A DNA stretch of 64,000 bases from Haliotis rubra. Lineage: Eukaryota. This document shows, piece after piece, positions 43,671 to 59,786 of this stretch (positions are counted from its first letter, which is position 1; every line of letters starts with the position of its first letter). Both the position numbers and the translations under genes were made by a program. The stretch is from NCBI RefSeq assembly GCF_003918875.1, contig NW_025767000.1, positions 992,001 to 1,056,000 of the forward strand, written 5' to 3'. The notes under the pieces are model-generated. The model saw only the letters and a program-made list of their open reading frames with translations, was not told the origin of the DNA and made no database searches.

Positions 43671-45252
43671 GATGTATAAGTCTGGTTCGTGACTTTCATT
43701 TAGTCCCTCCAACTGGTTTACAGATCATAACCTTCCCTGTGAATGCAAGTAGTTTCAATAGGGGGAGCGATGGTATGTGAATGTTTTGTGGTACATGGAT
43801 ATACACCCACGTATACGACAATCGGAAACAGACTTGCTTCTTGCAAGCCTACTTTGTATAACCTGTTGTGAGCTCCTTCCCATGAAAGTCAAACATACTA
43901 TGGTCAAGAGGATCTGGGTAATTTCGCAACCTTTCACCGCTTTATAAGAACACTGGATGGTGTGTGAGGACGCGTATCGGGGAATGTTATGTCAGTAGAA
44001 GGGTAGTTTAGTATATTTCAACATGGCTGCTTTTGTTGACGTTATTAAGCCTACCGTATTGAAAATCCATTTAGGTTATGTCATGGCTTGTTTTCCAGAA
44101 CCCGTGAAGATCCGTTTTAGAATTGATCTTCAGCAAGAGTGAGTTAGTTTTCGCCGCACTCAGCAATATTCCAGCTAAATGGCGGCGGTCTGTAAATAAT
44201 CGAGTCTGGACCAGGCAAACCAGTGATCAACAGCATAAGCATCGATCTGCGCAATTGGGAACCGATAACATGTGTCAACCAAGTCAGCGAGCCTTACCAC
44301 CCGATCCCGTTAGTCGCCTCTTACGACAAGCATAGTTGCCTTTTGTGGCAAGCATAGGTTGCTGAAGACCTATTCTACCCCGGATCTTCACGGGTCAGAA
44401 TATGTTGAAAACCAAATGAGTTACAATAGCAGGCATAACATTAGTGACCCGCAGAGGTACAGATCAGCTGCGTATCAACGTAAATTACGCAAATACTTAT
44501 ATATGTTAAAACTCTTATTAAGTCTGTTGCGTACCAGTACGCTTGAATTTTTGTAAATACTCTATAAATGTGATTTTACTGAGGATAGATAAAATACCTG
44601 ACGTATATTGAGAGCTTCTATATCAGCACATGAACTTGACAACTTATTGTCTTTCTTATCCTTTCTCATGTTACTGATCAACTATGAATAACAAACATGC
44701 AAACCAACATTTAAACTTAATAATATTTTTACAATTAACAGAAAATAGCAAAATATCCAGTTGAGTTTGAGTGAGGTGAGTACAATTTATTTGGTTGCTC
44801 AAAGGAAAATTAGGATACCCAATTGAGATGAAGACATGCGAGTACATAATTCAATGACCCCAAAGTTATCTGTAGCTCTGTCATTAGTTTGTGTCACGGT
44901 CCCGGAACCGCATTGTTTACAATTCTACCATCTCACTGGGGCTCCTTTTCAGTTTAAATTGAATGTGTGTTTCTATCAAAATTATATATATTCAGACAAA
45001 GCGTTAGTCTAGCATATCAGGTGCTTGTTCTATGATTGGAACCATTTCTGGATTATACTCCTTATACTCCATGGGGTGGCCTGGTAGTTAAAACATTCAC
45101 TCTTCATGACGAAAGACAAGGTTCAATTCACCAAATGGATGCATTTCGAGAAGCCCATGACCGATGTCCACCCTCTTGATAGTATCTGAATATTGCTTGA
45201 ATAGGTAAAAGTATACTCACTAACTTTTTAATAATTTAAAAAAATGTTTCAG

Positions 45253-47669
45253 ATGCAGTTTTATGACATCCCTAATGTGTCTTTGACCATCCTGGTACTT
45301 CTCATGGGTACCATCGAAGGATTGCCAACTCAAAGTGGATCAAACATAAGTATGCAGCGGATGACCCAGAAAGTCTTATGCATGTTCTAATCCTAGTACA
45401 GTTCAGCCTCGGTTTAAATGATATAGGTACTGTTGGTCAAACAGTAGTCGGCCTAACAATATTTATATGTTTGAAAAGACTCCATTCTATTTGGAAGGAA
45501 TCATTAGCAAAGCCATATCTAAAATTTCACATATGTGGGTAATGTGGATAACGAGATATTAGTCATCACAACACATTGAGGTATAATATTTCTAAAATAT
45601 ATAAAATGAAATAAGGTTCTGTCATTTGGTACCTCTTGGATAATGGTATGCCCTCACATAATGTGATATAAAATATGTTCAGTATAGTATTGGATGACTT
45701 CCCGTCATAATAAACAATCAAAGACTTGGATTGCTTGATTTATATTTAGACGGGGGCTGTTTCTTAAGGACACCCCCATTTTAATCTTTCAAAAACACCA
45801 GATCAGATATTCAAGCTGGCCCTTTTACCATATAGTGAGAGCTGAGAGCGATTGGATTTTCCAGTTGCCTTTTATGCACTCTAATATCTAAGCTTGATTC
45901 TAGCGACTTCTGTCTATCCCAAACACACAAAACGTTTCTTGCACATTTTGTTTCCTGAAGTTTGTGATGCATTTATTGCAGATCTTCGAACATAGCAAAA
46001 CCAATTTGCTTGAGGTTGACAGATAACATGTAGAAATATCAAAAATGAAAACAGCTGCATTTGTGTCATTTTATAGGTGAGGCCGACTACTTTTATATCT
46101 AGTTCCAAAATGTTGTTAGTAGCCGTTAAGTCGTTTTATTCAAAACCGATATGTGAAGCATAGCAATGAATAATAGGGTGATGTAGCAGGGCGTTGCTCT
46201 CACTTCTGACTCTCCTGCATATTTCAGAACACAGTAAAGTTTTGATTCTCGGAGCCGGGGCGTCAGGTTTGGCTGCTGCAAAGACACTGAACGAAAAGAA
46301 CATCAGCGACTTCATCGTCCTGGAGGGCTCGGGCAGGATCGGCGGCAGAGTCAGGTCCGTCAGATTTGGAGGCACCACAGTGGAAGCTGGTGCGAACTGG
46401 ATGGCTGTTCGGGAAGGAAATCCTTTGTGGGATATCATTCGGAAGTTCAACGTGTCTGGGAAGACATCAGACGGCGACAGTGTGGTCATAAGAACGTATG
46501 AAGGCAGTGACGTCACGGACACGGAGGGTGAGTTGGCATGGCGTAAACTTGCGAAAGCTGAGATCAAGTTAAACAGTGTTATCAAGAGAATGCAAGATCA
46601 AAAGACCGAGGACATGTCCCTGCGCTCTTGCCTTGACATCGGAAATTGGCATCCGAAAACACCCGTGGAAAAGGTTGTGGAGATTTATGGCTTTGACTAT
46701 GATTATGGAGCTATTCCCGACGTTTCTTCGTGTTATTACCACGGCAGACTAGAGAATGTGGATGACAGTTTCTACGTCCGTGACGACAGAGGATATGAGT
46801 TCATATTGAAGAAATACGTAGAGAACGCGCTGCCAGAGAACGATCAACGAATTCTTCTGAACGAAACTGTTACTGCGATCAACTACACTGACACCAGCGT
46901 GTCTGTAACTACCGTCAGCGGGAACATCTTCGTCGCCGACTTCGTCATCGTTACCTTTAGCATCGGAGTGTTGAAGAGCGGTTCTGTGACTTTCAATCCT
47001 CCGCTACCAGACTGGAAGATCGACAACCTGTTCCGAGTCAGACTAGAGAACTACGAGAGCGTGTACCTTAAGTTTCCCGATACAACGTCAAGGTTCTGGG
47101 ATGACACCGAATTCATCCTCTACGCTGACAAAACACGAGGAGTGTATCCAGTTTGGCAGAACCTGGAGGCTGAAGGATTGTTCCCGGTTGGAACTAACAT
47201 TCTCCAGATAGTGACCTACGGTGAGGAGGCTAGCAGAATAAGTCGGCTTACTGCCCGTGATGTAAAGGACGAGGTGATGACGATACTACGGAGAGTCTAC
47301 GGTAATGTCACGGAACCTGAAGATGTATTCATTACGGGCTGGAAGAACAATCCATTGTACAAGGGATCCTACTGCAATATGGAAACAGGAGCACAAAGTC
47401 CCAGAGTGGTCGAAGCTATAACGGCACCCGTGGGGAGGATCTATTTCGCTGGGGAAGCGTATAGTAGGGATGTGTCTTGTTACGTAACTGGGGCTGTTCA
47501 AAGCGGAATCGTCACGGCAAAGAAGGTAACCAAATGTTCGAAAGGAACGTGCGAGGTTTATGATTCGGGAGAAGCAGGTCCGAGTACCAAGACCCCGACG
47601 GTTGCAGCGTGTCCTTCTGGCGGGTCCTGTCAGGACGGAGGAAAATGGCCGTGCTTGTGTGCATGGTGA
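45253..47669 (+). CDS. Flavin amine oxidase, plant-type polyamine-oxidase-like (PAO-1); signal-peptide exon 45253-45349 plus catalytic exon 46228-47669
   Basis: GAGASG dinucleotide fold, RIGGR, VEAGANW and IYFAGE. The upstream exon MQFYDIPNVSLTILVLLMGTIEG-LPTQ.. ends in phase 1 (A/GTATGC), matching the phase-1 acceptor TTTCAG/AA. Exon 1 is inferred. Confidence 0.85.
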
Positions 47670-48067
47670 TGCTTATTGTTTCATGCACATAGTTACTTAA
47701 GATAGAGACAGTATATATGTATATAAATCTTACATATAATTGGAATACTAAATGAATATATTGGAAATATCATTCACATGTCTGCATTAAAACCCAACTC
47801 TTGCTGAATATTGCTTTGCCGCTTGTTGAATTCTTCGTTGCAAGAACATGCTTATTGGTACCAGTTATGAAATGTACACATTCATAGTTGGACCTTCTGA
47901 AACATCCCTTCACATAAAGCTGAAGTTGACTTTCAGAAAGTTCAAGTAATCCCTTTTGTCATAATGTCTTGTAGAAAGTGTTTTGCCACTGTCGATCTTA
48001 AAACATACATCTAAAGTCGAAAACACAGGCCGTTCCACCTTGCCTCTTTTACTTTATTGGTAAATCA

Positions 48068-48243
48068 GTGAAGTGAGTGAGTGAATTAGTTCAGTTGTAC
48101 GCCGCTTTTTGCAATATTCCTACAATATCACGACGGGGGACACCAGAAATGGGCTTCGCACATTGTACCCTTGTGGGGAATCGAACCCGGGTCTTCGGCG
48201 TGACGATCCAACGCTTTAACCACTTGGCTACCCCACCGCCCCT
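48068..48243 (-). mobile_element. tRNA-derived SINE, family 1, full length
   Basis: A/B boxes and ACTC tail. Confidence 0.85.
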
Positions 48244-49211
48244 CACGTTAATGCCCCACATGGGAATAACTGACTATTGTCAGTGCCACGGTGCCGGAAT
48301 GTCATAAACAATCTAGTATTCTAATGTTAAAAATTGTGTATATGTTCACAGTTGTATTACTGTCAGCTAATTGCATTAACATTATAAAACATTAAACAGC
48401 CTACTAACCTTGACAGATCTTGGACAGTCAAATACACAACAAACGTTTGATTAAATCAGTCACCGAGTGAATGGGCAAAGAAAATATAACAAATTCTCAA
48501 TAAAATAAGATAAGATTCAACGGAGTTTTATACCAACAAAGGTTAAAGAAAGTTACTAGGTCCACAAGGTAATTGACAACAGCAAACAGTGAAACACGTA
48601 CCTTACCTAAACTAGACAATCACGGGAAGGTTGGTTATATACGGATTTCTGAAAAGACGGGACCTAATAAACCATAGCTAAACGTTTAGCTCAATAACAC
48701 CAAAATAAGTAACTACTTTGAGAGAAAACTAAGAGGACTTCAGAGGAGACACTGTCTCTAGGCGAGCCGCGGTAAGGCTATAACCTGATGCAGGAACCAA
48801 AAGGTGTCTCTTTACAAAGGAAACACCCGAATAGCAAACTAAATCCAACTCCAATGTAGAAGGTGTATATGCCACAGTATGGAGCAGAACACAAGCTACC
48901 CAACCAACATTACCACTAAACAATTACATTCAGCTATGTACAATAACTGAGAAAACAAAAATGACCATACGTGAAATATCAACTAGTACGAGATAATTCA
49001 GCCAATACTTAAAAATCAAAGTTACAAAAGAGTTTTAATACACGAATGAGGTAGCATACACACATGAAATAACCCACATCGAGTACATACATGATGAAAG
49101 TACGCGATACCTCGCAAAGCAAAAGATGTACGAACACTAAGCCTCCCGGATAGTAATACTTAACGTACAGTCCGCGACAAACGCTGGAGTTCGCCGACCG
49201 TTTTCTGAAAC

Positions 49212-49547
49212 AGTCTCCGTGCTGTAATGGTTAGAGCGTCCGTCCGAGAGCGGAAGGTCGCGGGTTCGACCGCCAACCGCGTCATACAAAAGACGTTAAT
49301 ATATGGTATTTGTTGGTCCCTGCCTGGCGCTCGGCATTAATGGGTACAACAAGGACTGGTCGACTCGGAGTCAGTATAATGTGTCTAAGAGGGTATTCAT
49401 GCTTAACTGCGGCATGGTATCTCAGTGAGCTAGCACTATAAAACCAGTTTAAGTCTGGGCTAGTACAAGCAGCCACACATACACACATGCACGTCGTCAT
49501 ATGAGCGAAATATTATCAACTACGTTACACCCCACTTCACCTCACCT
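49212..49547 (+). mobile_element. tRNA-derived SINE, family 3
   Basis: Second copy of the 40881 element. Confidence 0.85.
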
Positions 49548-51564
49548 AAGAAACAGACCAATCAGCTATAGGAGGGCACTGGACCATGTCATGGGAACTC
49601 TACGGCCTGGTGACAGTCAGCAACAGAGACGTCAACAAACATCCTGGAAGTCAGTAATCTATATTTATAAATAACTGAATAACCCGGTTTATGTTACAAA
49701 ATATCTGCTGGCGCTGCGATTTGCAATGTTCACATGTGTGTGCTAATGAGTCGCAGTGCAACAGGTTGTGAAAACTAACCATCCACGTGACGCCCATATT
49801 AAGTCATTTCCGTTGTAGTTCTGCTGGACGAAGGAACACCATCAGGACTTTGTGGACGACTTGAGGGCATGATCGATCTAGTTTAGATCACACCGACCTC
49901 CGATTACCTCTGTATGGAACCTGAGAAGGTAAGTAAGGATAAACCTGCACAATACCTGATCGATACATAGACTATTCCCCCCTTCCTTTCTGAACTGTAT
50001 CGAACGTTGTGATATCTTCTGAATGGAATTTTTAGGGGATGGTGCCTTCCGACTATTATTGTCCTGACTCATTGTGTTGACAACCCAAACTACATTATTT
50101 AAGAAGTAAAGTACTCCCTATGTGTAGTGTAAAGAAACATAGTTTTGCATTAAAGTATAATAGTCGAAGCGCAAGGACATTTTACATTGCCACTAGAAAA
50201 ACCAAAACCAAAGGATCTCAATGATCAATCAAATCAACTATGTTATACATCCAAATTGATTTTGCAAAAGTTTTCGTCGCTCAGATACATCGTGAAGATA
50301 TGGATCTAAAGCATTTACTATGGAATATCAGTTGTGATAAATCGTTTACATATAAACCGTACATGTATGCTTTGTGAACCTGTTTCTGACATAATATTCT
50401 CATCACGTTATATCTGCATTGGAATACGGCCAGCATAATACACAGGTACATTGTACTGACGTTCCCTTGCATGGGATAATGACGTTCTGCATGCACTCCT
50501 TGCTTAATGATGGGTTGTTAGGGTATCATTAGATATACGCATTACAGTTTAGACGTAAGAGCAAGTTTTGAGTTGCGGGTGCAACCGGTGGAGCAAGACA
50601 TGCTTACCTGTTTCATGAACTACTTATGTCATCACTTATTTTCAGTGGTCGTTCCGTTTAATGTCCACCAAAGATGTTTCCGCAGACAGTCGAGATTGGT
50701 TATTTTTCTGGCGTTGCGGTTTCACAATTTGTAAACCCGTGAAGATCCGGGTTAGAATTGATCTTCAGTAACCAATGCTTGTCGTACTTATGGGATCGGG
50801 TGGTCAGGCTCGCTGACTTGGTTGACACATGTCATCGGTTCCTAATTGCGCAGATCGATGATCATGTTGTTGATCACTGGACTGTCTGGCCAAGACTCGA
50901 TTATTTACAGACCGCCGCCATGTAACTAGAAAACATTTGCGGAAGAGTCTTAGCCACTATCAAAGATACCTTTCCTGGCCTTTTACTATCGTGGAATGAA
51001 TACGAATTTGCAAATAAATGATTAACATGAAATAAATTCACTAAAACTGAGAATACCCCACAACATGCCATCTTGTGGGGTGGCGGAGGAACGTGTTGTA
51101 ATAGACACAACATATCAACACATTATCTACAGCCTCCGAAAACCTTCAATGAAAAGATCAGTTTTCAATGCACCTATACTATTTAGGTAGCATATATTCA
51201 TATGTTTTGCTTTTCTCAATGTTCTATTAAACTGTCCTATTTACCTGAACGTCGCAAAAGTTTTACTAACTATGGGTAATAAAGGGGCTTTTTATAATTA
51301 ACTGGCTTGAATTCAACTTCAGTTAAATAATAATACCATATAATCCTTGAAAGCCTTCACAAGTTTAGAATTACTGTGCAACAGGGCATGCGGCCATAAA
51401 CCAGAGTCTACCCATCCTAAACATGTCATGGTCGCCTTCCTGCTTTGCGTGCACCGAACACAGTATGCAAAAACACTGGCTTCCATTTGTGTTATCTCAT
51501 TTCAAATTACATATGTTTTCTTTTAATTTTTGTGAAAGGATCACATGCCTTTGTTTAGTACACA

Positions 51565-51937
51565 GTAATAGTAATAGTCCGCTTATATGGCGCTCATATC
51601 CAGGCACATTGCCTGCTCACGGCGCTACGTACATTACTACCCCGGTCATAAGACACTATCGTACTTTCCGATACTTTTCCAACTCCCTGGGAAGCATACA
51701 GCCACGCTGCCTGTTAGGCGCAATGAACTTAACACTCGCATTGACAGCTGCATCCTCACGGGTACCCATTTTACAGCTGATTGAACTGAGACAATGTGGA
51801 CCTAAGTATCTTGTTCAAGGATACTACCCGAATGTGCCCACCTCGGGACCCCAACCTAGATGCCTCCACCAGGGATCGAACCCAGGCCTTCAGCGTGATA
51901 GGCAGACGCCTTACCACTGCACTATTGCGCTCCACAC
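51565..51937 (-). mobile_element. tRNA-derived CORE-like SINE
   Basis: TAGTGCAGTGG / GGTTCGATCCC head, TCCTTGAACAAGATACTT..CAGCTGTAAAATGGGTACC core, and a (TAT/TAC) tail. Confidence 0.75.
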
Positions 51938-52099
51938 AGCGAACAGATTGCGAACAGAGATCAAAGGTTGGGCTGCCATGTGTGATTAAACCAACAAGAA
52001 AGCAAGAGCAAAACGCAATGCTTGCTGGGAAGCAGCGTCAGATATTATAAACCAGAGCCAGCGGACAGAGGTGCTGAAGGAACATGCAAAAATGCAGAA

Positions 52100-52620
52100 G
52101 GTGCGGGTGGCGGGGCAGAACCAGGAACATGAGCAGAAGAAGCAGGAACAGGAGCAAGAACATACGCAGGACCAGGAGGAGAAGGAATAGCAACAAACAC
52201 GGGAGCAGAATGAGCAGGACCAGGGACAGACGGAGCAGGTACAGGAAAATAAACTGGAGCAGAAGAAGGAACAGCAAACCGAACTGTTCAGGAACACTAA
52301 CAGAAGGAGCAGAAATAGGAGCAAAAGGAACAGGAACAGAAGCAGGTACATGATTAGATGGAGCAGGAACAGGAACAAAATGAGCAGGAACAGGGGGGCA
52401 AAAGGTGCAGGAACAGAATCAGGAGCAAGAACAGAAGCAGGAACACGATTAGAAGGAGCAAGAACAGGAACAATACCAGGAACAGGAACAGGAACAGAAG
52501 GAAAAAGGGACATCAACAGATGCAGTTGCAGAAAGAGGAACATGCAGAGAAAACGATGCAGGAATGGAAAGAGGAGCAGGAACAGATGCAGGACGAGGAC
52601 CAGCAGCAGGATCAGGATCA
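52100..52620. repeat. Purine-rich low-complexity (CAGGAA/GAGCAG)n tract
   Basis: The Glu/Gln-like frame is broken by stops and frameshifts. Confidence 0.8.
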
Positions 52621-54252
52621 TGTTGCTCATAAGTATATGTTGCTAAATTCTCTGAGTGTACTGTAGCCGTCCACGACGAGGATTTAATGACTGAGGTAAC
52701 AGTATATAGATAAGAATGTTCTACTGCAATTGAGTATAATGAATAACCATGAACACATTATTCATACACTCCGAATATGTTTTATCACTGATGCATATTT
52801 ATTCTGTAAAAAGGGGAAAGATATTAATGTTACATATTCATTTGTTCGCCAGAACCAACGCACTGATATATTATGGTGCAAGTCAACATAGAGAATGGCA
52901 CAGATATAATTTTCTTCAACACCAGATGAAAGGGTCGTATGCCGTTATTTGAAAGAGCATGCTCGTTTGTGGCCCAAAAGTTGTGGGACTTGCTGGAACA
53001 TTGCTCGACATCAAGGGAAAACTGACGTCGTCGTTCTTGTTGGAAGTCTTGTTTTGTGTTTTAAGTCCCACAACTTGTCTTGTTTTGGTTTTTCATAATC
53101 TTAATGTATACCTCAATATAAAACACATAAGGTTGTTTACTTTGTTTCTAGTTCAGATGGGTAAATCAGTTGAAGGGAATTTGCTATTTGATGGTTATTG
53201 CTATCAGATCATCGACTTACCTGTAAATTAAGTTAAAGTGCTGATCTAAAAAAACACTTTTACTTTGCCGAATTTATGTGATACAGATAGAGATACATCA
53301 ATCAAGTGTGGACTAACAGTTAAGAATAACCCATTTGACATAGTTCAACAATTCCTGGAAATCACAGCGTGATACGTTCATCAACCTGAAATCTGATACG
53401 TTTGTGTAGGACAGCAGAAACTGGTTCAACACTGCTGGATAATACAGAACACTAAGCCAGAATCTCTCGATGTGTGTATACTGTATGTTTAAGGACAGCA
53501 CATGGACATTTCCTCAAATGGACATTTTCGGTACATGAACGTTTTCAGTCTACATGAATGAGGGGAATGGATTGTGTCATTTTGTGTTACAGTGGACAAT
53601 ATGCCGTCTTTGATCGTGTTACAGCTAAATATGATTATTAAATTAAATATTTCAAAATGGCTATTAGATTAAAGTAACTGAAGCTAGCGGTGGTAACTAA
53701 ACACACAGACATATAACATAGCAATACAATATGACTTATGTCTGAATATTATCTCACGACAGAAGATGTCTGTGTATCCCTAAGGGATCTTATGTACGAG
53801 CAATTAGTGTAATGCTGTCATACATTGTAGTAGGTCATTCTCTGCAGTCTATCTCTTCACAGCTGCTCTCAAGCGAATGTTCTACTTGTCAGGAGAAACA
53901 GTATATAGCCTTCTTTAAGACTGATATCATCACTGCAACACGCTAGTTATTGGTGAGTGTCGCATTTACCTTTGTGACTTCTGTTGTATTTGAACGCTGT
54001 GCCAAAGATGAACCCTGTACTTTATAACTGATTGTAGTATTTGAGAAATAATGTATTATTTCAGTTCACTTGATGATACCCAGGAATCCAAATCCTTAAT
54101 GGCGACTTCAAGTAAGACTTCAAGTAAGCTGCAGAAACAGAAACTTTGGTTATTACTGGTAAGTTACTAGCCACATTTTCTGGCTTGCCCAAGGTTGGAC
54201 AGTCTCCATCCAAACCCTTTCTATGATCATGCGGATACAGCGTTTTGAGAAA

Positions 54253-54291
<39 letters not shown>

Positions 54292-54924
54292 TGTTTGTGT
54301 GTTTGTTTGTTTGTTAGTGTGTGTGTGCAGGGGATCCGCCTTTGCATAGAAATCCATGTAAAACAAAAAAGTCCACTGTAAGACTCCGACTCGATCATAA
54401 GCATGTACGTATGAACCCCTATCAAACAATTATGATACCAGGTGTTCGTGAAAAGCTGAACCTAACTTGCTTCAGGAAAACAGTAAAACATTTGACACAG
54501 GACAACGTAGAGAATTGCATAAGGGCATCATGGTCGAGACTAACGTTTTGAATGTAACCCTGTTCATACAACATTGCGCCATATTACGATACCACCACAA
54601 AGGGAGAGCTGACTGTTGGAGAGTTGGAGTAAGGGACCGTTTATAATTTATGGCTTGGGGAGGCGCGCGTTCTGCTGAGGTAGGGTGTCATCAATTATGT
54701 ACACATGCACTGTACATATAAATGTTGAAAAGTTATGCTGCCAAAATATCTGAAGGGGGGTGGGTGGGGTGTTTGTGTCATTGTTCTTGCACTTACTTTG
54801 CACATAAGTTTCACATTATACATGCTTCTCAATTTACGTCACTCTGAATCTTTACGCATAGATCTGAATATGAATCAGTATATTTCATTTCTTGTTCAGC
54901 TTGGTAATTTGGTGGAAACGAAAT

Positions 54925-55093
54925 GACTGACTGACTGAGTTGTTTTTTTTACGCCGCTTTTAGCAATATTCCAGCAACATCACGGCGGGGGACACCAGAA
55001 ATGGGCTTCACACATTGTACCCATGTGGGGATTCGAACCCGGGTCTTCGGCGTGACGAGCCAACGCTTTAACCATTAGGCTACCCCACCGCCC
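54925..55093 (-). mobile_element. tRNA-derived SINE, family 1, full length
   Basis: A/B boxes and conserved body. Confidence 0.85.
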
Positions 55094-56019
55094 GGTGGAA
55101 ACGAACTAGTTATTTCAACTTTTTCTGAATGAAGATCATTGATATACCTGAAGTTAAAGTTAAACTTCTCGCAAGATTCTCTTGTTTTGATTTTGTCTAC
55201 CCGAGGTGAATTCCCAAGAAATGAGCAAGGACTGTTGCACGATTGGCGTCCTTTGGTGTCCTTACCTCTTGCCATATGTCCCATCAGCAAATGTCAGATC
55301 GATGTCATCCATGAGGATGTCAATCAACTAATTTAATTTTATACAAATTGACCTCCTGTAAGATAGGGCTGTCACTTCATCTATTGACAAATGACTTTCC
55401 TTAAGTATACCAAGTTGAAATATCAAATGCTTTTTAACATAACTGAACTTGGATCTTTGAGAATCCACATGATATTAATTCCACTTGTCTCAATTCTATT
55501 ACTATAATTAAGTCGTTCCTTGATTGTTAGACCATAAGATTACTCTTTGAGACAAAAGTAAGGAGTTGCGCAGCAATATATCTCTCTTTGTACTGAATTG
55601 TGTAGAACTTCCTATGTAAAAATAGGAATGGAGATGTCTGCTGGTTTGAAAGTTCAAGTAAGAGTCGATAGAGCTGATGCGCGGTTTTGGATGGTTAAAT
55701 TCTCTCTTACCAACGTTTTGGATGATTAAATTCTGTGTCACCAAGGTTTTGCTCGTCACGATATGGCTGAAATATTGCCGATGTGACGTTAAATAATAAC
55801 TCACTCACTCACCAAGGTTTTGTATGATTACATACTGTAACGTCACTGTGATGAAACATTGAATGTTATGAGTCTATATAATATTTGAGAATTGTCATTT
55901 CTACTTCATACAGAAACGAAGAAACCAATACCAAAACAACTTTATACTATCATTCTACCAACTCTGAGCCATGAACGGCAACCATTATTTCAACATACAC
56001 TACTTATATTCCGCAGATA

Positions 56020-58152
56020 ATGTCTGTTGGTGTGGCGCTTCTATGCATGTATGCTGAGATCGTGGCCAGTAAATTCATTCAGCCTGTTGGAAGAGACGTA
56101 CATGCTCAAGGGTCAAGTGAAAGGACATCCGTTGGAAGGACTAGTACGCATCATGATTCCTGTCTATTACAGCAGTACTTAGACTTGATACTTTCCTTGA
56201 TGGATACTAGTAATATCGCCCCGCGATTGATGATCAGTGTCGCTAAAACTGACAGATCTTACCATCACTTTACTATCAGGAATGCGGGGCTGAAACTGCA
56301 GTGTATACAACCCTCTTAATTCAAAGAGCCTTGCCCTAGGACACATATATACTGGACAAAATAAGTTAGGTATATTTATGATTGATATTTTATCAGTGTG
56401 TCAATGAATAAATATATTGTTATTGATAATTTCAAAATTTACATATATCCCTAACTATTTTTGTCCAGTATAGATATAAAATGTGAATTATGTTCATATA
56501 TAACAGTTATTTTGATGGTTGAGGAGACAATTTGGGCCACAAAAAACTGTGTGCAAGTGGTTTTCGACTTGGGTTCTATGTAAATGAGGGCCGCATGTAT
56601 CAACATCCCGAAAAATATAATAGTGAGGCACTTTCTTCAAGAGGGCATGTGGATATTTTGACAGTATTGTCTTAACAATACTTGCCTGAAACAAAAGTCC
56701 CCACTTATCTTACACGCAAAACACATTATAACGACGAAAATAACAAAGGTGTGTCAGGAAAAGTCACTTGTACATGGGCGGATGTTGTTAATATAAACTA
56801 ACAATGTTGCAGATTGGGCCAAGGTGCTGATTCTCGGGGCTGGAGCAGCAGGAATGTCAGCAGCCAAAGAATTAACACAAAATGGCATCACAGACTTTTT
56901 AATGATCGAAGGCTCCAATAGGATTGGTGGCAGGTTAAAATCCGTTCGCTTTGGTGGAAAAACGGTCGAGGCTGGAGCGAACTGGATGATGGTTAGGAAT
57001 GCCCGAAACCCACTATGGCAGACAATACAGAAGTACAACATCTCAGGCCGAACACTTGATGAAAAAGATGTGTTGATAAGATACATGAATGGTGAAGATG
57101 TAACGACGACTGCGGGTGCAAAGGCATGGGAAAAACTGTCGATAGCAAAGGAAACGATGTCGGAGATTACAACCCGGATGACAAGTGGTGCTCAAAGTGA
57201 CATGTCCATCAGGGCTTGTCTGGGTCTGGGAGAGTGGGAACCTGTAACTGCCGTGGAGAATGTGGCGGAGGTTTTCGAATACGACTTTCAGTATGGCAAT
57301 ACTCCCGAAGTCTCATCCTGCCGGAGTGATGGAATCCTGCAGCAATACCTCGACGGTATGTATTACATTGCGGACGAGAAAGGGTTCGAGTCGGTCATCA
57401 AGAACGTAGCAGACGAGATTTTTGAACAAAATGACGAACGATTGATTCTGAATGAAGTTGTACACACAATCAACTACACAGACTCTAATGTCGTTGTTGA
57501 GACAAGTAGTAGCACAATATACATATCAGAATTTGTTTTACTTACGTTCAGTATAGGTGTTCTCAAAAGCGGATCTGTGATATTTAATCCTTCGCTGCCG
57601 GAGTGGAAGGTAGACAATTTGGCAAGAGTGCGATTTGAAAATTACATGAGTATATTCCTGAAGTTCCCAGACAATACGCGTCAGTTTTGGGATGACGCAT
57701 TATACATTCTTCACGCCCACGAGAGAAGAAACTTCTACCCAGTGTGGATTAATCATAATTCCGATGCCATGTCAACAGAGGACACGAACATTCTTCAACT
57801 TGTTACATTTGGAGAGGAAGCCGACAGGATAAGCAAGATGGACGATGCTGAGATTACAAAAGAGGTCATGGAGGTCTTGAGAAAGGTGTACTGTAAAGGC
57901 AATGTTTCTGAACCGGAGGATGTTTTAATAACTCGATGGAAAACAGATCCGCTGTACCAGGGAAGCTTTGCCAATGTGCAGCCTGGAATTCCACTAGAGT
58001 CTTTGGGTACCATTTCAGCACCCGTTGGACGATTACACTTTGCAGGGGATGCTTACTCTGAGTTTGATGGATACGTTGTGGGGGCAGCCATAAGCGGGGT
58101 GGAAAGTGCCAGAAGGATTTTGCAAACACTCCGTGATGGTGCGAATTCGTAG
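56020..58152 (+). CDS. Polyamine-oxidase-like paralogue (PAO-2); tentative leader exon 56020-56068 plus catalytic exon 56813-58152
   Basis: GAGAAG, RIGGR, VEAGANW and LHFAGD. The acceptor TTGCAG/AT has the same position and phase as in PAO-1. A hydrophobic MSVGVALLCMYAEIVA follows CCGCAG; the donor choice is uncertain. Confidence 0.82.
56350..56470. mobile_element. 121-bp Tc1/mariner-type MITE in the PAO-2 intron
   Basis: TA-TACTGGACAAAA(T/A)..AGTTAGG / CCTAACT..TTTTGTCCAGTA-TA. Confidence 0.75.
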
Positions 58153-59315
58153 AAGAAAGTCATACACATTTTACTATCAGGAGACTCATTTTTGTCACAA
58201 GTCAGCAGGCCTTTTCCATACAAGTAAATATACAACGAAATCAGTGGCGAATACAAATGGAATTTCAAATTTAGTATTTTACCTTAAACCATCGTTTTAC
58301 ACCATATCAATAATGCATTCCTAATTTTGAATAAGTAATATCTTAGAAAACGTTTGATTTCACTCTATATCAAGTAATACCATCGAAACAGCACATACAG
58401 CCGAAACTACACGTGCAATCAGGGTATATAAATGATAGGACCGCGTGTGAGACAATCGCAAGGAGTAACAAAGCATAACAGGGAATACCTCGACTGACAT
58501 CGGAACAAAGCAAGCAAGCCCTGGGTATGATACAGATGAGAGCTACCCAAGGTAGCCACGGCTAATAAATACCGGTACTTGCGTGTTTTGTGTATGGATC
58601 ATATGGTTGGTCCTGCCCCCAGTCAACAGTTCTTGACAGTAGAGCATCCATGTCAGAGATTGAGAATTGACTGTACGTCGTTGACAGCGACGTGACTGGT
58701 AGAGGGTTGTCTTCGCTGACGAAAGCCGGTCTGTTCTGTCTGTTGTTTAATGCCGAACAGGAGAATGAAAGGCGGAATCCTGCGTTCTGAGATGTCATGG
58801 ATCGTCGAGTTCTACAGCGGCAAATTCTCCATCCACTCGACATGAGCTGATCTAGACCGGTCAAGGTGAAAGGCGACGTATCCCACATGACGTCGTAGTT
58901 TGTAGTCGAGGGTGGTCATTCACGCTGTTAACGCGACGTGTAATTGAACTTGAGCTATTTAAATTTTAGATTAGATTTTGGTCTTTTCAATACATTTTAC
59001 TTCATGTGCCTATTGTCTGTGGTTTTTAAACGAAATTGTGTTTTTTGAACTACAGCTTTTTTCAGGTTTGAAAGGGTGAACAATAATTGAATCGCCTCAG
59101 TACGTGTGGTTTTCATTATATATGACACCTCATTATCCACACACTGCTTATGCGTGACATGCAACGTTTGTATTATACCAGAGAGCGAATACATCTTGCG
59201 ACGCGTTTAACGTTTTACAGAAATGACAACAGGCCGATAACGAGACACACTCTCAAATATATAAGGGAATTCTTGATTTGAGTGCAGCTTTTGTTGAGTT
59301 CTAACTTACATTACC

Positions 59316-59316
<1 letters not shown>

Positions 59317-59375
<59 letters not shown>

Positions 59376-59381
59376 CGCGCA
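59317..59381. repeat. (GT)n(GC)n microsatellite
   Basis: Direct reading; another (GT)n lies at 54256-54327. Confidence 0.95.
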
Positions 59382-59786
59382 CAAACGCAATAGTCACATT
59401 AAGCTGCACTTGCTCACACAAGCCAGAGAGTGTTGGTTCTCTAATGACACTCGCTAATGCAACTGAGTAAACATCACGCTTGAAATGAAATAACTCTGAG
59501 ATATTACTTCCATGAACAGAAAACTGCGTTTCGTGGGTACTGTAGAGGAGGGACCTCAGTATGTGAGATATTGCCCGAGAGTATATTTTCTTGACTGTGA
59601 AATAGGTACTGTAAGTCAATGAGCCGGTCAGACCTAAAGAATGACACCTGGACAAGTCGTCACATAACATTAACTAGACTTTGCACTAGATTAAAATCTG
59701 CACCTGTCATAGAGAATTTCGTGCAGTAGCAGAGAAAGACAAATGCAACATGAACACATGCCGTTTAACTTAGTGCAGGGCTACCT

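What the first reader, a model, noticed from the sequence alone, without database searches (positions are those of the whole stretch)
46228..58152. Both PAO-like paralogues lack the conserved FAD-N5 lysine and the Glu/His after GANW
By-eye alignment to maize PAO, from memory: YTKIFLKFP (Lys300) reads YESVYLKFP and YMSIFLKFP; GANWVEG (Glu62) reads GANWMAV and GANWMMV; the Glu170 position is Asp or Gln. The FAD fold and aromatic sandwich (GSY/GSF, YV.GA) are retained in two well-diverged intact ORFs. Established: the Lys-water-N5 motif is important for catalysis and O2 reactivity in PAO/MAO/LSD1 enzymes. Inference: a secreted subfamily with a new substrate, a dehydrogenase mode or a binding-only role.
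Basis: partly seen in the sequence, partly recalled or inferred. Interest (0 to 1): 0.7.

Follow-up and report, generated by a model that had tools for sequence, protein, structure and literature searches.

The report
Abalone PAO-like flavoenzymes lacking catalytic lysine
Two neighbouring abalone genes encode secreted or cell-surface relatives of plant polyamine oxidase in which a lysine described as strictly conserved in these enzymes has been a serine since before the abalone gene family expanded; the genes are conserved and one is shown to be expressed, so they probably react poorly with oxygen or act on a different substrate.

Summary
The window is Haliotis rubra DNA: both products are 100% identical to its RefSeq proteins. 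It holds two tandem genes for maize-PAO-like (Clade I) FAD amine oxidoreductases that are 51% identical. Each has a short signal-peptide exon, a phase-1 intron and one large exon.

In both genes the maize K300 position is Ser (AGC 47058-60, AGT 57649-51). E62 is Ala or Met, and E170 is Asp or Gln. Y298, the F403/Y439 aromatic pair and all FAD motifs are kept.

All 12 Haliotis homologues from five species have Ser and form one clade, so the change happened once. The genes are under purifying selection (dN/dS 0.14-0.21). PAO-1 is spliced and transcribed.

The E62 change is unremarkable, because Ala is normal in AtPAO1-like enzymes. The lysine loss is not: a 2020 survey calls K300 strictly conserved in all PAOs. 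I count at least 11 K/non-K changes in this mostly marine-invertebrate family.

Human MAO A K305S loses 100-fold in kcat, so poor O2 reactivity is the best inference. It remains untested. A clade-specific Arg/Lys after the GANW motif could compensate, and I could not check this.

Public reads show that PAO-1 really ends in a GPI-like hydrophobic tail.

The parts
45251..45349 (+). PAO-1 coding exon 1. ATG at 45253, hydrophobic signal-like N-terminus, ends in phase 1. A 5'-UTR exon lies further upstream.
   Evidence: Translation and splice sites read. RNA-type contigs of 3 runs join 45349 to 46228 (GT..AG), and their sequence before 45251 does not match the window there. tblastn of the P0002/P0003 N-termini.
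45350..46227 (+). PAO-1 intron (878 nt, GT..AG), holding high-copy repeats at about 45458-46059.
   Evidence: Joint 'skips 878' in X1-X3. Word depth reaches 130,000 in the large run X5, which holds the intron, within this stretch.
46228..47669 (+). PAO-1 main exon as assembled: the whole Amino_oxidase domain plus a C-terminal linker.
   Evidence: Pfam PF01593 E 2e-54. 1b37 E 2e-69. AF2 model pLDDT 91, Foldseek TM 0.85-0.89 to 1b37. 100% identical to H. rubra P0001.
47058..47060 (+). PAO-1 Ser codon (AGC) at the maize K300 position.
   Evidence: No variant at this place in 4 public runs.
46404..46412 (+). PAO-1 Ala at the E62 position (46404-06) and the clade-specific Arg (46410-12) in the shortened loop after GANW.
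46701..46703 (+). PAO-1 Asp at the E170 position.
47628..47692 (+). PAO-1 C-terminal tail. The assembly lacks one G after 47643 that all 4 laid runs carry. With that G the frame runs into a 15-residue hydrophobic GPI-signal-like end, with the stop at 47690-92.
   Evidence: Frame-2 translation. Insertion 'G behind 47643' and T47628C in X1, X2, X3 and X5. Orthologue tails in P0002, P0003 and P0009.
56020..56143 (+). PAO-2 signal-peptide exon. ATG at 56020, phase 1, GT donor at 56144.
   Evidence: tblastn of P0011 residues 5-48.
56813..58152 (+). PAO-2 main exon: the whole Amino_oxidase domain, with no hydrophobic tail.
   Evidence: Pfam E 5.8e-52. 1b37 E 1.7e-73. 99.8-100% identical to H. rubra P0011.
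57649..57651 (+). PAO-2 Ser codon (AGT) at the K300 position.
56989..56997 (+). PAO-2 Met at the E62 position (56989-91) and the clade-specific Arg (56995-97).
57289..57291 (+). PAO-2 Gln at the E170 position.

Best explanation
These are two members of an abalone-specific, multi-gene subfamily of Clade I (maize ZmPAO1/AtPAO1-like) FAD amine oxidoreductases. They are exported. PAO-2 is a soluble secreted protein. PAO-1, with its true C-terminus, is probably a GPI-anchored ectoenzyme.

The Lys that bridges a water molecule to flavin N5 was replaced by Ser once, before the Haliotis paralogues split. Other polar-to-apolar changes occurred around the flavin at about the same time: the E62 site became A/I/M, the H441 site became T/V, and the W406 site became M/V.

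Shown here: the substitutions, a single origin, an intact FAD-binding apparatus and aromatic cage, purifying selection, and transcription with splicing of PAO-1.

Inferred: the proteins still bind FAD and still take a hydride from an amine. That amine is less polycationic than spermine or spermidine. The reduced flavin reacts with O2 much more slowly than in canonical PAOs. They would therefore be slow H2O2 producers or would pass electrons to another acceptor, such as a quinone.
For: Fold and family: PF01593 over the full length. ZmPAO is the best solved relative for both genes, at E 2e-69 and 2e-73, against 3e-30 for human SMOX and 6e-17 for mouse PAOX. The AF2 model has pLDDT 91.2 and TM 0.85-0.89, rmsd 2.2 A, to 1b37.

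Lys to Ser. All 12 Haliotis homologues have Ser and form one clade with 100% support. The Ser codons are AGC and AGT.

FAD motifs and the catalytic aromatics W60, Y298, F403 and Y439 are invariant or conservative within the clade.

dN/dS is 0.14-0.21 with no indels over 441-470 codons in three orthologue pairs for PAO-1 and one for PAO-2.

Spliced 1.7-kb contigs are present in 3 runs.

Clade-unique apolar replacements at the E62, H441 and W406 sites.

Experimental precedent: human MAO A K305S has a 100-fold lower kcat with unchanged Km. K305M is reduced normally by substrate, reoxidised very slowly by O2, and can use quinones (PMC8009472). A natural FAO with Glu at this site has the lowest kox(O2) measured (PMC12224317).
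Against: No enzymology exists for any member. MAO A K305Q is as active as wild type (PMC8009472), so the positive charge is not always needed. Ser invariance is weak evidence on its own, since 32% of columns are invariant in the clade. A true dehydrogenase outside the cell needs an acceptor, and none is identified. E170 is kept as Glu in 6 of 10 paralogues, and Ala at E62 occurs in active AtPAO1-like enzymes (PMC7576179), so polyamines are not excluded as substrates.
Confidence: 0.5

Rival explanations
1. They are ordinary extracellular polyamine oxidases. The Lys is dispensable here because Ser plus water, or the clade-specific Arg/Lys in the loop after GANW, takes over its role, and H2O2 is produced normally.
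For: The aromatic cage, Y298 and FAD motifs are kept. MAO A K305Q is fully active (PMC8009472). A basic residue is conserved in all 10 Haliotis paralogues at main-exon position 61 and is absent from Lys-bearing relatives. E170 is kept in most paralogues. Ala at E62 is compatible with activity in AtPAO1-like enzymes (PMC7576179).
Against: The exact substitution K->S costs MAO A 100-fold in kcat, and K305R is dead (PMC8009472). Three polar flavin-side positions became apolar together, and only in this clade, which points to a changed pocket rather than a like-for-like replacement.
Confidence: 0.22
2. They are non-catalytic proteins: pseudoenzymes that use the PAO fold, with or without FAD, to bind an amine or another ligand at the cell surface or in secretions.
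For: A residue described as strictly conserved in all PAOs is lost (PMC7576179). Acidic and polar tunnel residues are lost. Purifying selection fits any function, not only catalysis.
Against: Every dinucleotide-binding and flavin-side motif is retained after roughly 50% sequence divergence between paralogues: GxGxxG, the acidic residue ending beta-2, GGR, and GE/GD near the C-terminus. So are Y298, F403 and Y439. Lys mutants of MAO A still oxidise substrate (PMC8009472).
Confidence: 0.15
3. They are decaying duplicates, or the Ser is an assembly or annotation artefact.
For: The assembled PAO-1 has a frameshifted C-terminus.
Against: The ORFs are intact, and dN/dS is 0.14-0.21 across species separated by dS 0.34-0.70. 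The same Ser is found in independent assemblies of five species and in contigs of four public runs. PAO-1 is spliced and transcribed. The frameshift is absent from all four runs.
Confidence: 0.02

Closest known systems
Maize polyamine oxidase ZmPAO1 (PDB 1b37; Clade I, apoplastic)
   Same: Best sequence and fold match: about 31% identity, TM 0.85-0.89. Shares the N-terminal signal peptide, non-covalent-type Ser at position 402, aromatic Y298, and the F403/Y439 sandwich that marks Clade I.
   Different: K300 is Ser and E62 is Ala or Met. The loop after GANW is 2-3 residues shorter and carries a new Arg/Lys. The H441 site is Thr/Val and the W406 site is Met/Val. The host is an animal. PAO-1 has a GPI-like tail. 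There is one intron, against 8 in the plant genes.
AtPAO1-like Clade I PAOs
   Same: Ala at the E62 position, as in PAO-1.
   Different: They keep K300 (PMC7576179) and are cytosolic plant enzymes.
Engineered human MAO A K305S / K305M
   Same: The same family and the same Lys position. K305S is the identical substitution.
   Different: These are laboratory mutants of a mitochondrial, covalently flavinylated enzyme. Their kcat is 100-200-fold lower, and O2 reoxidation is slow and rescued by quinones (PMC8009472). The abalone proteins are natural and selected, and may carry compensating changes.
Flavoprotein amine dehydrogenases NicA2/Pnao, and the Glu-for-Lys FAO of Pseudomonas sp. GL-RE-19
   Same: Members of the same superfamily with suppressed O2 reactivity. 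The GL-RE-19 enzyme is a natural case of Lys replacement with the lowest kox(O2) measured (PMC12224317).
   Different: They are bacterial and use cytochrome c as acceptor, and NicA2 and Pnao keep the Lys. The abalone proteins are extracellular animal proteins with no known acceptor.
Animal SMOX/PAOX (Clade II PAOs)
   Same: FAD amine oxidases of polyamine catabolism in animals.
   Different: They are much more distant (E 3e-30 and 6e-17, against 2e-69 for ZmPAO), intracellular, keep the Lys, and lack the Y439 half of the sandwich (PMC7576179).

Membership tests
Flavin-containing amine oxidoreductase superfamily (Pfam PF01593) | Full-length match to the family profile above the curated cut-off | tested here: met
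   186 and 178 bits against a cut-off of 19.8, covering profile positions 2-443.
Flavin-containing amine oxidoreductase superfamily (Pfam PF01593) | Dinucleotide-binding GxGxxG, an acidic residue at the end of beta-2, the GGR motif, and the C-terminal GE/GD FAD motif | tested here: met
   These are invariant or nearly invariant columns, all present in both proteins. PF13450 also matches.
Flavin-containing amine oxidoreductase superfamily (Pfam PF01593) | Two-domain FAD/substrate fold | tested here: met
   AF2 model pLDDT 91.2. The Foldseek top hits are ZmPAO, LSD2, PAOX, SMOX and LSD1.
Flavin-containing amine oxidoreductase superfamily (Pfam PF01593) | Lys that hydrogen-bonds through a water to flavin N5 ('nearly universally conserved') | tested here: not met
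   Ser in both genes and in all 12 Haliotis homologues.
Clade I polyamine oxidases (ZmPAO1/AtPAO1-like) | Closest to ZmPAO1 rather than to Clade II-IV enzymes | tested here: met
   PDB ranking. In the tree they sit with plant PAO1, Marchantia and fungal sequences.
Clade I polyamine oxidases (ZmPAO1/AtPAO1-like) | Aromatic sandwich F403/Y439 and an aromatic residue at Y298 | tested here: met
   Tyr or Phe, Tyr, and Tyr respectively. Y298 and Y439 are invariant in the Haliotis clade.
Clade I polyamine oxidases (ZmPAO1/AtPAO1-like) | K300, reported as strictly conserved in all PAOs (PMC7576179) | tested here: not met
   Ser.
Clade I polyamine oxidases (ZmPAO1/AtPAO1-like) | Acidic E62/E170 pair near the flavin | tested here: not met
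   E62 is Ala or Met, and E170 is Asp or Gln. E62 is itself variable within Clade I.
Clade I polyamine oxidases (ZmPAO1/AtPAO1-like) | Oxidation of spermine or spermidine with H2O2 release | not testable with these tools
   Needs recombinant enzyme.
GPI-anchored ectoenzymes (PAO-1 only) | N-terminal signal peptide, plus a C-terminal small-residue site, a polar spacer and a terminal hydrophobic stretch | tested here: inconclusive
   The pattern is read by eye in the frame restored by the reads' extra G, in orthologues, and in amphioxus, hemichordate, starfish and mussel relatives. No GPI predictor or experiment was available.

The most novel reading that the evidence does not exclude
Marine invertebrates carry a previously unsurveyed animal branch of Clade I PAOs, mostly GPI-anchored ectoenzymes. 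In this branch the 'universal' N5 lysine has been replaced many times: Ser in abalone, His in unionid mussels, Asn/His/Gln in starfish, and Thr in one amphioxus copy. The abalone clade would then be a natural, selected set of extracellular flavin amine dehydrogenases, or very slow oxidases, with a non-polyamine substrate. That would be a natural counterpart of the engineered MAO A K305S/M.
Probability: 0.3. Interest if true: 0.75.

Novelty: new variant of a known kind. Interest (0 to 1): 0.55.

Why it matters
How flavoprotein oxidases speed up, and dehydrogenases suppress, the reaction of reduced flavin with O2 is an open question. In this superfamily the N5 lysine is the residue most consistently implicated. 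A published survey of PAOs across all life states that K300 is strictly conserved, and it places no animal sequences in Clade I.

This locus shows an animal Clade I branch with a stable, expressed, Lys-less subfamily under purifying selection. There are several further independent losses in the wider family. That supplies ready-made natural variants for testing what the lysine does, and what can replace it, by simple back-mutation experiments.

It also points to an unexplored class of cell-surface amine-oxidising, or amine-binding, proteins in molluscs, echinoderms, hemichordates and amphioxus.

Tried and rejected
1. Placing the clade-specific Arg/Lys (main-exon position 61) or K249 relative to N5. 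The AF2 job returns no coordinates, so this could not be done. K249 is an unlikely substitute: a minority of Lys-bearing relatives (5 of 51) also have Lys there, and from memory LSD1 does too.

2. Testing whether loss of K300 co-varies with changes at the E62, E170, H441 or W406 sites across the family. Only 7-8 independent pairs were available, so the test has no power (median p = 1).

3. Looking for a third copy or pseudogene in the window. tblastn found only the two genes.

4. Literature on abalone PAOs. None was found. The amine_oxidase protein of the H. laevigata shell proteome is described as aplysianin-A-like, so it is probably LAAO-type (PMC6003135). I had no sequence to compare.

5. 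Other notes of this scan on PAOs in this genome. There were none.

6. The RefSeq 'isoform X2' first exon (45378-45425) is not used by any laid contig.

7. All searches used the main exons by reference.

9. The large representative-library search was not run. The word search already gave 350 relatives.
Full report
**What is there.** Between 45.2 and 58.2 kb the window holds two same-strand genes, each with a long ORF that matches Pfam Amino_oxidase end to end (E 2e-54 and 6e-52). The ORFs are 46194-47669 and 56824-58152. They are 51% identical to each other.

The products are 100% identical over the aligned columns to two Haliotis rubra RefSeq proteins, 'polyamine oxidase 7-like' and 'polyamine oxidase 1-like'. 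The window is therefore blacklip abalone DNA. It contains no N.

Neither ORF has an ATG ahead of the GxGxxG motif, so each needs an upstream exon:
- PAO-1 has a coding exon at 45251-45349 with ATG at 45253 and a hydrophobic N-terminus. It is joined in phase 1 to 46228.
- PAO-2 has one at 56020-56143, joined in phase 1 to 56813.

All searches used the main exons by reference.

**Expression.** Contigs of three small public runs (1,727 and 1,745 nt in X1 and X2) lie on 45251-45349 and then on 46228-47749. They skip 878 nt with GT..AG ends. The large run X5, which unlike the spliced contigs holds the intron, carries it. PAO-1 is therefore transcribed and spliced as predicted. The contigs show no difference at the Ser codon. 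PAO-2 expression was not tested, because only one reads call was allowed.

**The observation.** phmmer against the PDB puts maize PAO first for both proteins (E 2e-69 and 2e-73). Human SMOX (3e-30), LSD2, LSD1 and mouse PAOX (6e-17) follow far behind.

The K300M mutant entry 3kpf reads YTMIF where wild type reads YTKIF, which fixes K300. It aligns without gaps, in a block with six of nine identical neighbours, to Ser in YESVY (PAO-1, AGC 47058-60) and in YMSIF (PAO-2, AGT 57649-51).

The other positions align as follows:

| Maize residue | PAO-1 | PAO-2 |
|---|---|---|
| E62 | Ala | Met |
| E170 | Asp | Gln |
| F403 | Tyr | Phe |
| Y439 | Tyr | Tyr |
| Y298 | Tyr | Tyr |
| S402 | Ser | Ser |

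An AlphaFold2 model of the PAO-1 main exon has pLDDT 91.2.

**How far it extends.** The word search found 350 relatives. In a MAFFT alignment of the best 120, all 12 Haliotis proteins have Ser at this column. They come from H. rubra, asinina, cracherodii and rufescens, plus the window. They form one clade with 100% support and three sub-lineages: PAO-1 type, PAO-2 type, and a third type on other chromosomes.

No Lys-bearing Haliotis member of this family was found. The nearest outgroups keep Lys: amphioxus, hemichordates, crinoids, cnidarians, fungi and plants. The replacement therefore happened once, before the family expanded. Both lineages use AGY codons.

The Lys is also missing elsewhere in the family:
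- Asn, His or Gln in three starfish proteins.
- His in four unionid-mussel proteins.
- Thr in one amphioxus paralogue.
- Asn in an octocoral.
- His, Asn, Thr or Arg in several unnamed eukaryotic contigs.

On the 106-row tree this requires at least 11 K/non-K changes, 8 of them across well-supported branches.

**Are the genes functional?** Main exons of the H. asinina and H. cracherodii orthologues align without a single indel. dN/dS is 0.14, 0.21 and 0.20 for PAO-1 pairs and 0.215 for PAO-2, with dS between 0.34 and 0.70. This is clear purifying selection.

The family's invariant and nearly invariant columns are all present in both proteins: GxGxxG, the acidic residue after beta-2, GGR, GANW and the C-terminal FAD motif. 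Within the Haliotis clade W60, D168, Y298 and Y439 are invariant. Ser is invariant too, but 32% of all columns are, so that alone proves little.

**What else changed.** I compared the 10 full-length Haliotis sequences with 51 Lys-bearing relatives. Several flavin-side positions are altered only in abalone:
- The E62 site is A/I/M, where the others have Q, H or E.
- The H441 site is T/V, where the others have H or Q, including the other Lys-less clades.
- The W406 site is M/V.
- The Thr of the GEHT motif is Y/F.

A basic residue (R or K) is fixed two positions after the E62 site, in a loop that is 2-3 residues shorter than in maize. It is the one candidate for a compensating cation. I could not place it in space because no model coordinates are returned.

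A second new Lys, in GVLKS, also occurs in a minority of Lys-bearing relatives (5 of 51), so it is an unlikely substitute. A test for co-variation between Lys loss and these sites had no power.

**Topology.** PAO-1 orthologues end in a Cys/Ser/Gly-rich linker followed by a 15-residue hydrophobic C-terminus. In the window that tail is out of frame. All four laid runs, from two studies and including both the spliced contigs and the intron-holding contig, carry one extra G after 47643. They also carry T47628C. Together these restore the orthologous ...R-M-A-V-L-V... tail, with the stop at 47690-92.

The assembled and RefSeq C-terminus is therefore an assembly error or a minor allele. This is the point raised by scan note s1-335225.

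Similar signal-peptide plus hydrophobic-tail layouts occur in the third Haliotis lineage and in amphioxus, hemichordate, starfish and mussel relatives. The animal branch therefore looks like a family of GPI-anchored ectoenzymes. PAO-2 lacks the tail and should be soluble. Both proteins carry N-glycosylation sequons.

**Comparison with what is known.** Salvi and Tavladoraki (PMC7576179) describe Clade I as PAOs 'of plants and fungi'. They place animal PAOs in Clade II. [quoted passage not shown] They note that E62 varies, being Ala in all AtPAO1-like enzymes and His in most clades, and that the F403/Y439 sandwich marks Clade I. By those criteria the abalone proteins are Clade I-like but fail the K300 criterion. 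Their E62 change is unremarkable.

Recent work on the superfamily calls the Lys 'nearly universally conserved'. It links the Lys to acceleration of the O2 reaction. A natural Glu variant has the lowest kox(O2) measured (PMC12224317; bioRxiv 2025.04.24.649827).

Human MAO A gives the most direct comparison (PMC8009472):
- K305S has a 100-fold lower kcat with unchanged Km.
- K305M is reduced normally by substrate, reoxidises over about an hour, and can use quinones.
- K305Q is wild-type-like.
- K305R is dead.

I found no paper on abalone PAO-like proteins.

**Verdict.** The finding is real and somewhat broader than stated. My best reading, at about 0.5, is an exported, FAD-binding, catalytically altered subfamily. 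It would keep the reductive half-reaction on a less polycationic amine but have intrinsically low O2 reactivity.

The rivals are an ordinary oxidase with local compensation (about 0.2), a non-catalytic binder (about 0.15), and decay or artefact (about 0.02, refuted by selection and expression). Only enzymology or a structure can decide between the first three.

It is a new variant of a known kind. It is of moderate interest to flavoenzymologists and is directly testable.

Noticed in passing
window 47628-47692: The assembly and RefSeq PAO-1 C-terminus is frameshifted. All four laid public runs have an extra G after 47643 and C at 47628. These restore a hydrophobic GPI-signal-like tail shared with the H. 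asinina, H. cracherodii and H. rufescens orthologues. This is an assembly error or a minor allele.
   Followed up: yes
P0014, P0016, P0018, P0023, P0040, P0042, P0004, P0005, P0007 (C-termini): Animal Clade I-like PAO relatives from amphioxus, hemichordates, starfish, unionid mussels and the third abalone lineage combine a signal peptide with a terminal hydrophobic stretch. This suggests a widespread family of GPI-anchored ecto-amine-oxidases that PAO phylogenies have not covered.
   Followed up: partly
window 45458-46059 (PAO-1 intron): Short stretches reach word depths of 24,000-132,000 in the large run X5, so the intron holds very high-copy repeats.
   Followed up: no
window 45378-45425: The alternative first exon of RefSeq 'isoform X2' (P0001 N-terminus) lies 29 nt past the real exon's donor. 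None of the spliced contigs laid here uses it, so it is probably a model artefact.
   Followed up: partly
window 51986-52666: A low-complexity stretch gives long overlapping ORFs on both strands: Leu/Phe/Cys/Ser-rich on the minus strand and Arg/Asn/Lys/Glu-rich on the plus strand. It looks like simple-repeat DNA rather than a gene.
   Followed up: no
window 54061-54429 and 59311-59670: (CA/TG)n microsatellites show up as His-Thr repeats in the mechanical ORFs.
   Followed up: no
L001 and L003 (H. cracherodii JAJLRC010000004.1, 26.65-26.72 Mb): The PAO-1/PAO-2 tandem pair is conserved in black abalone. There it is about 45 kb apart, against about 9 kb in the window. A 380-aa gene with no Pfam match is called within about 5 kb of PAO-1.
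   Followed up: no
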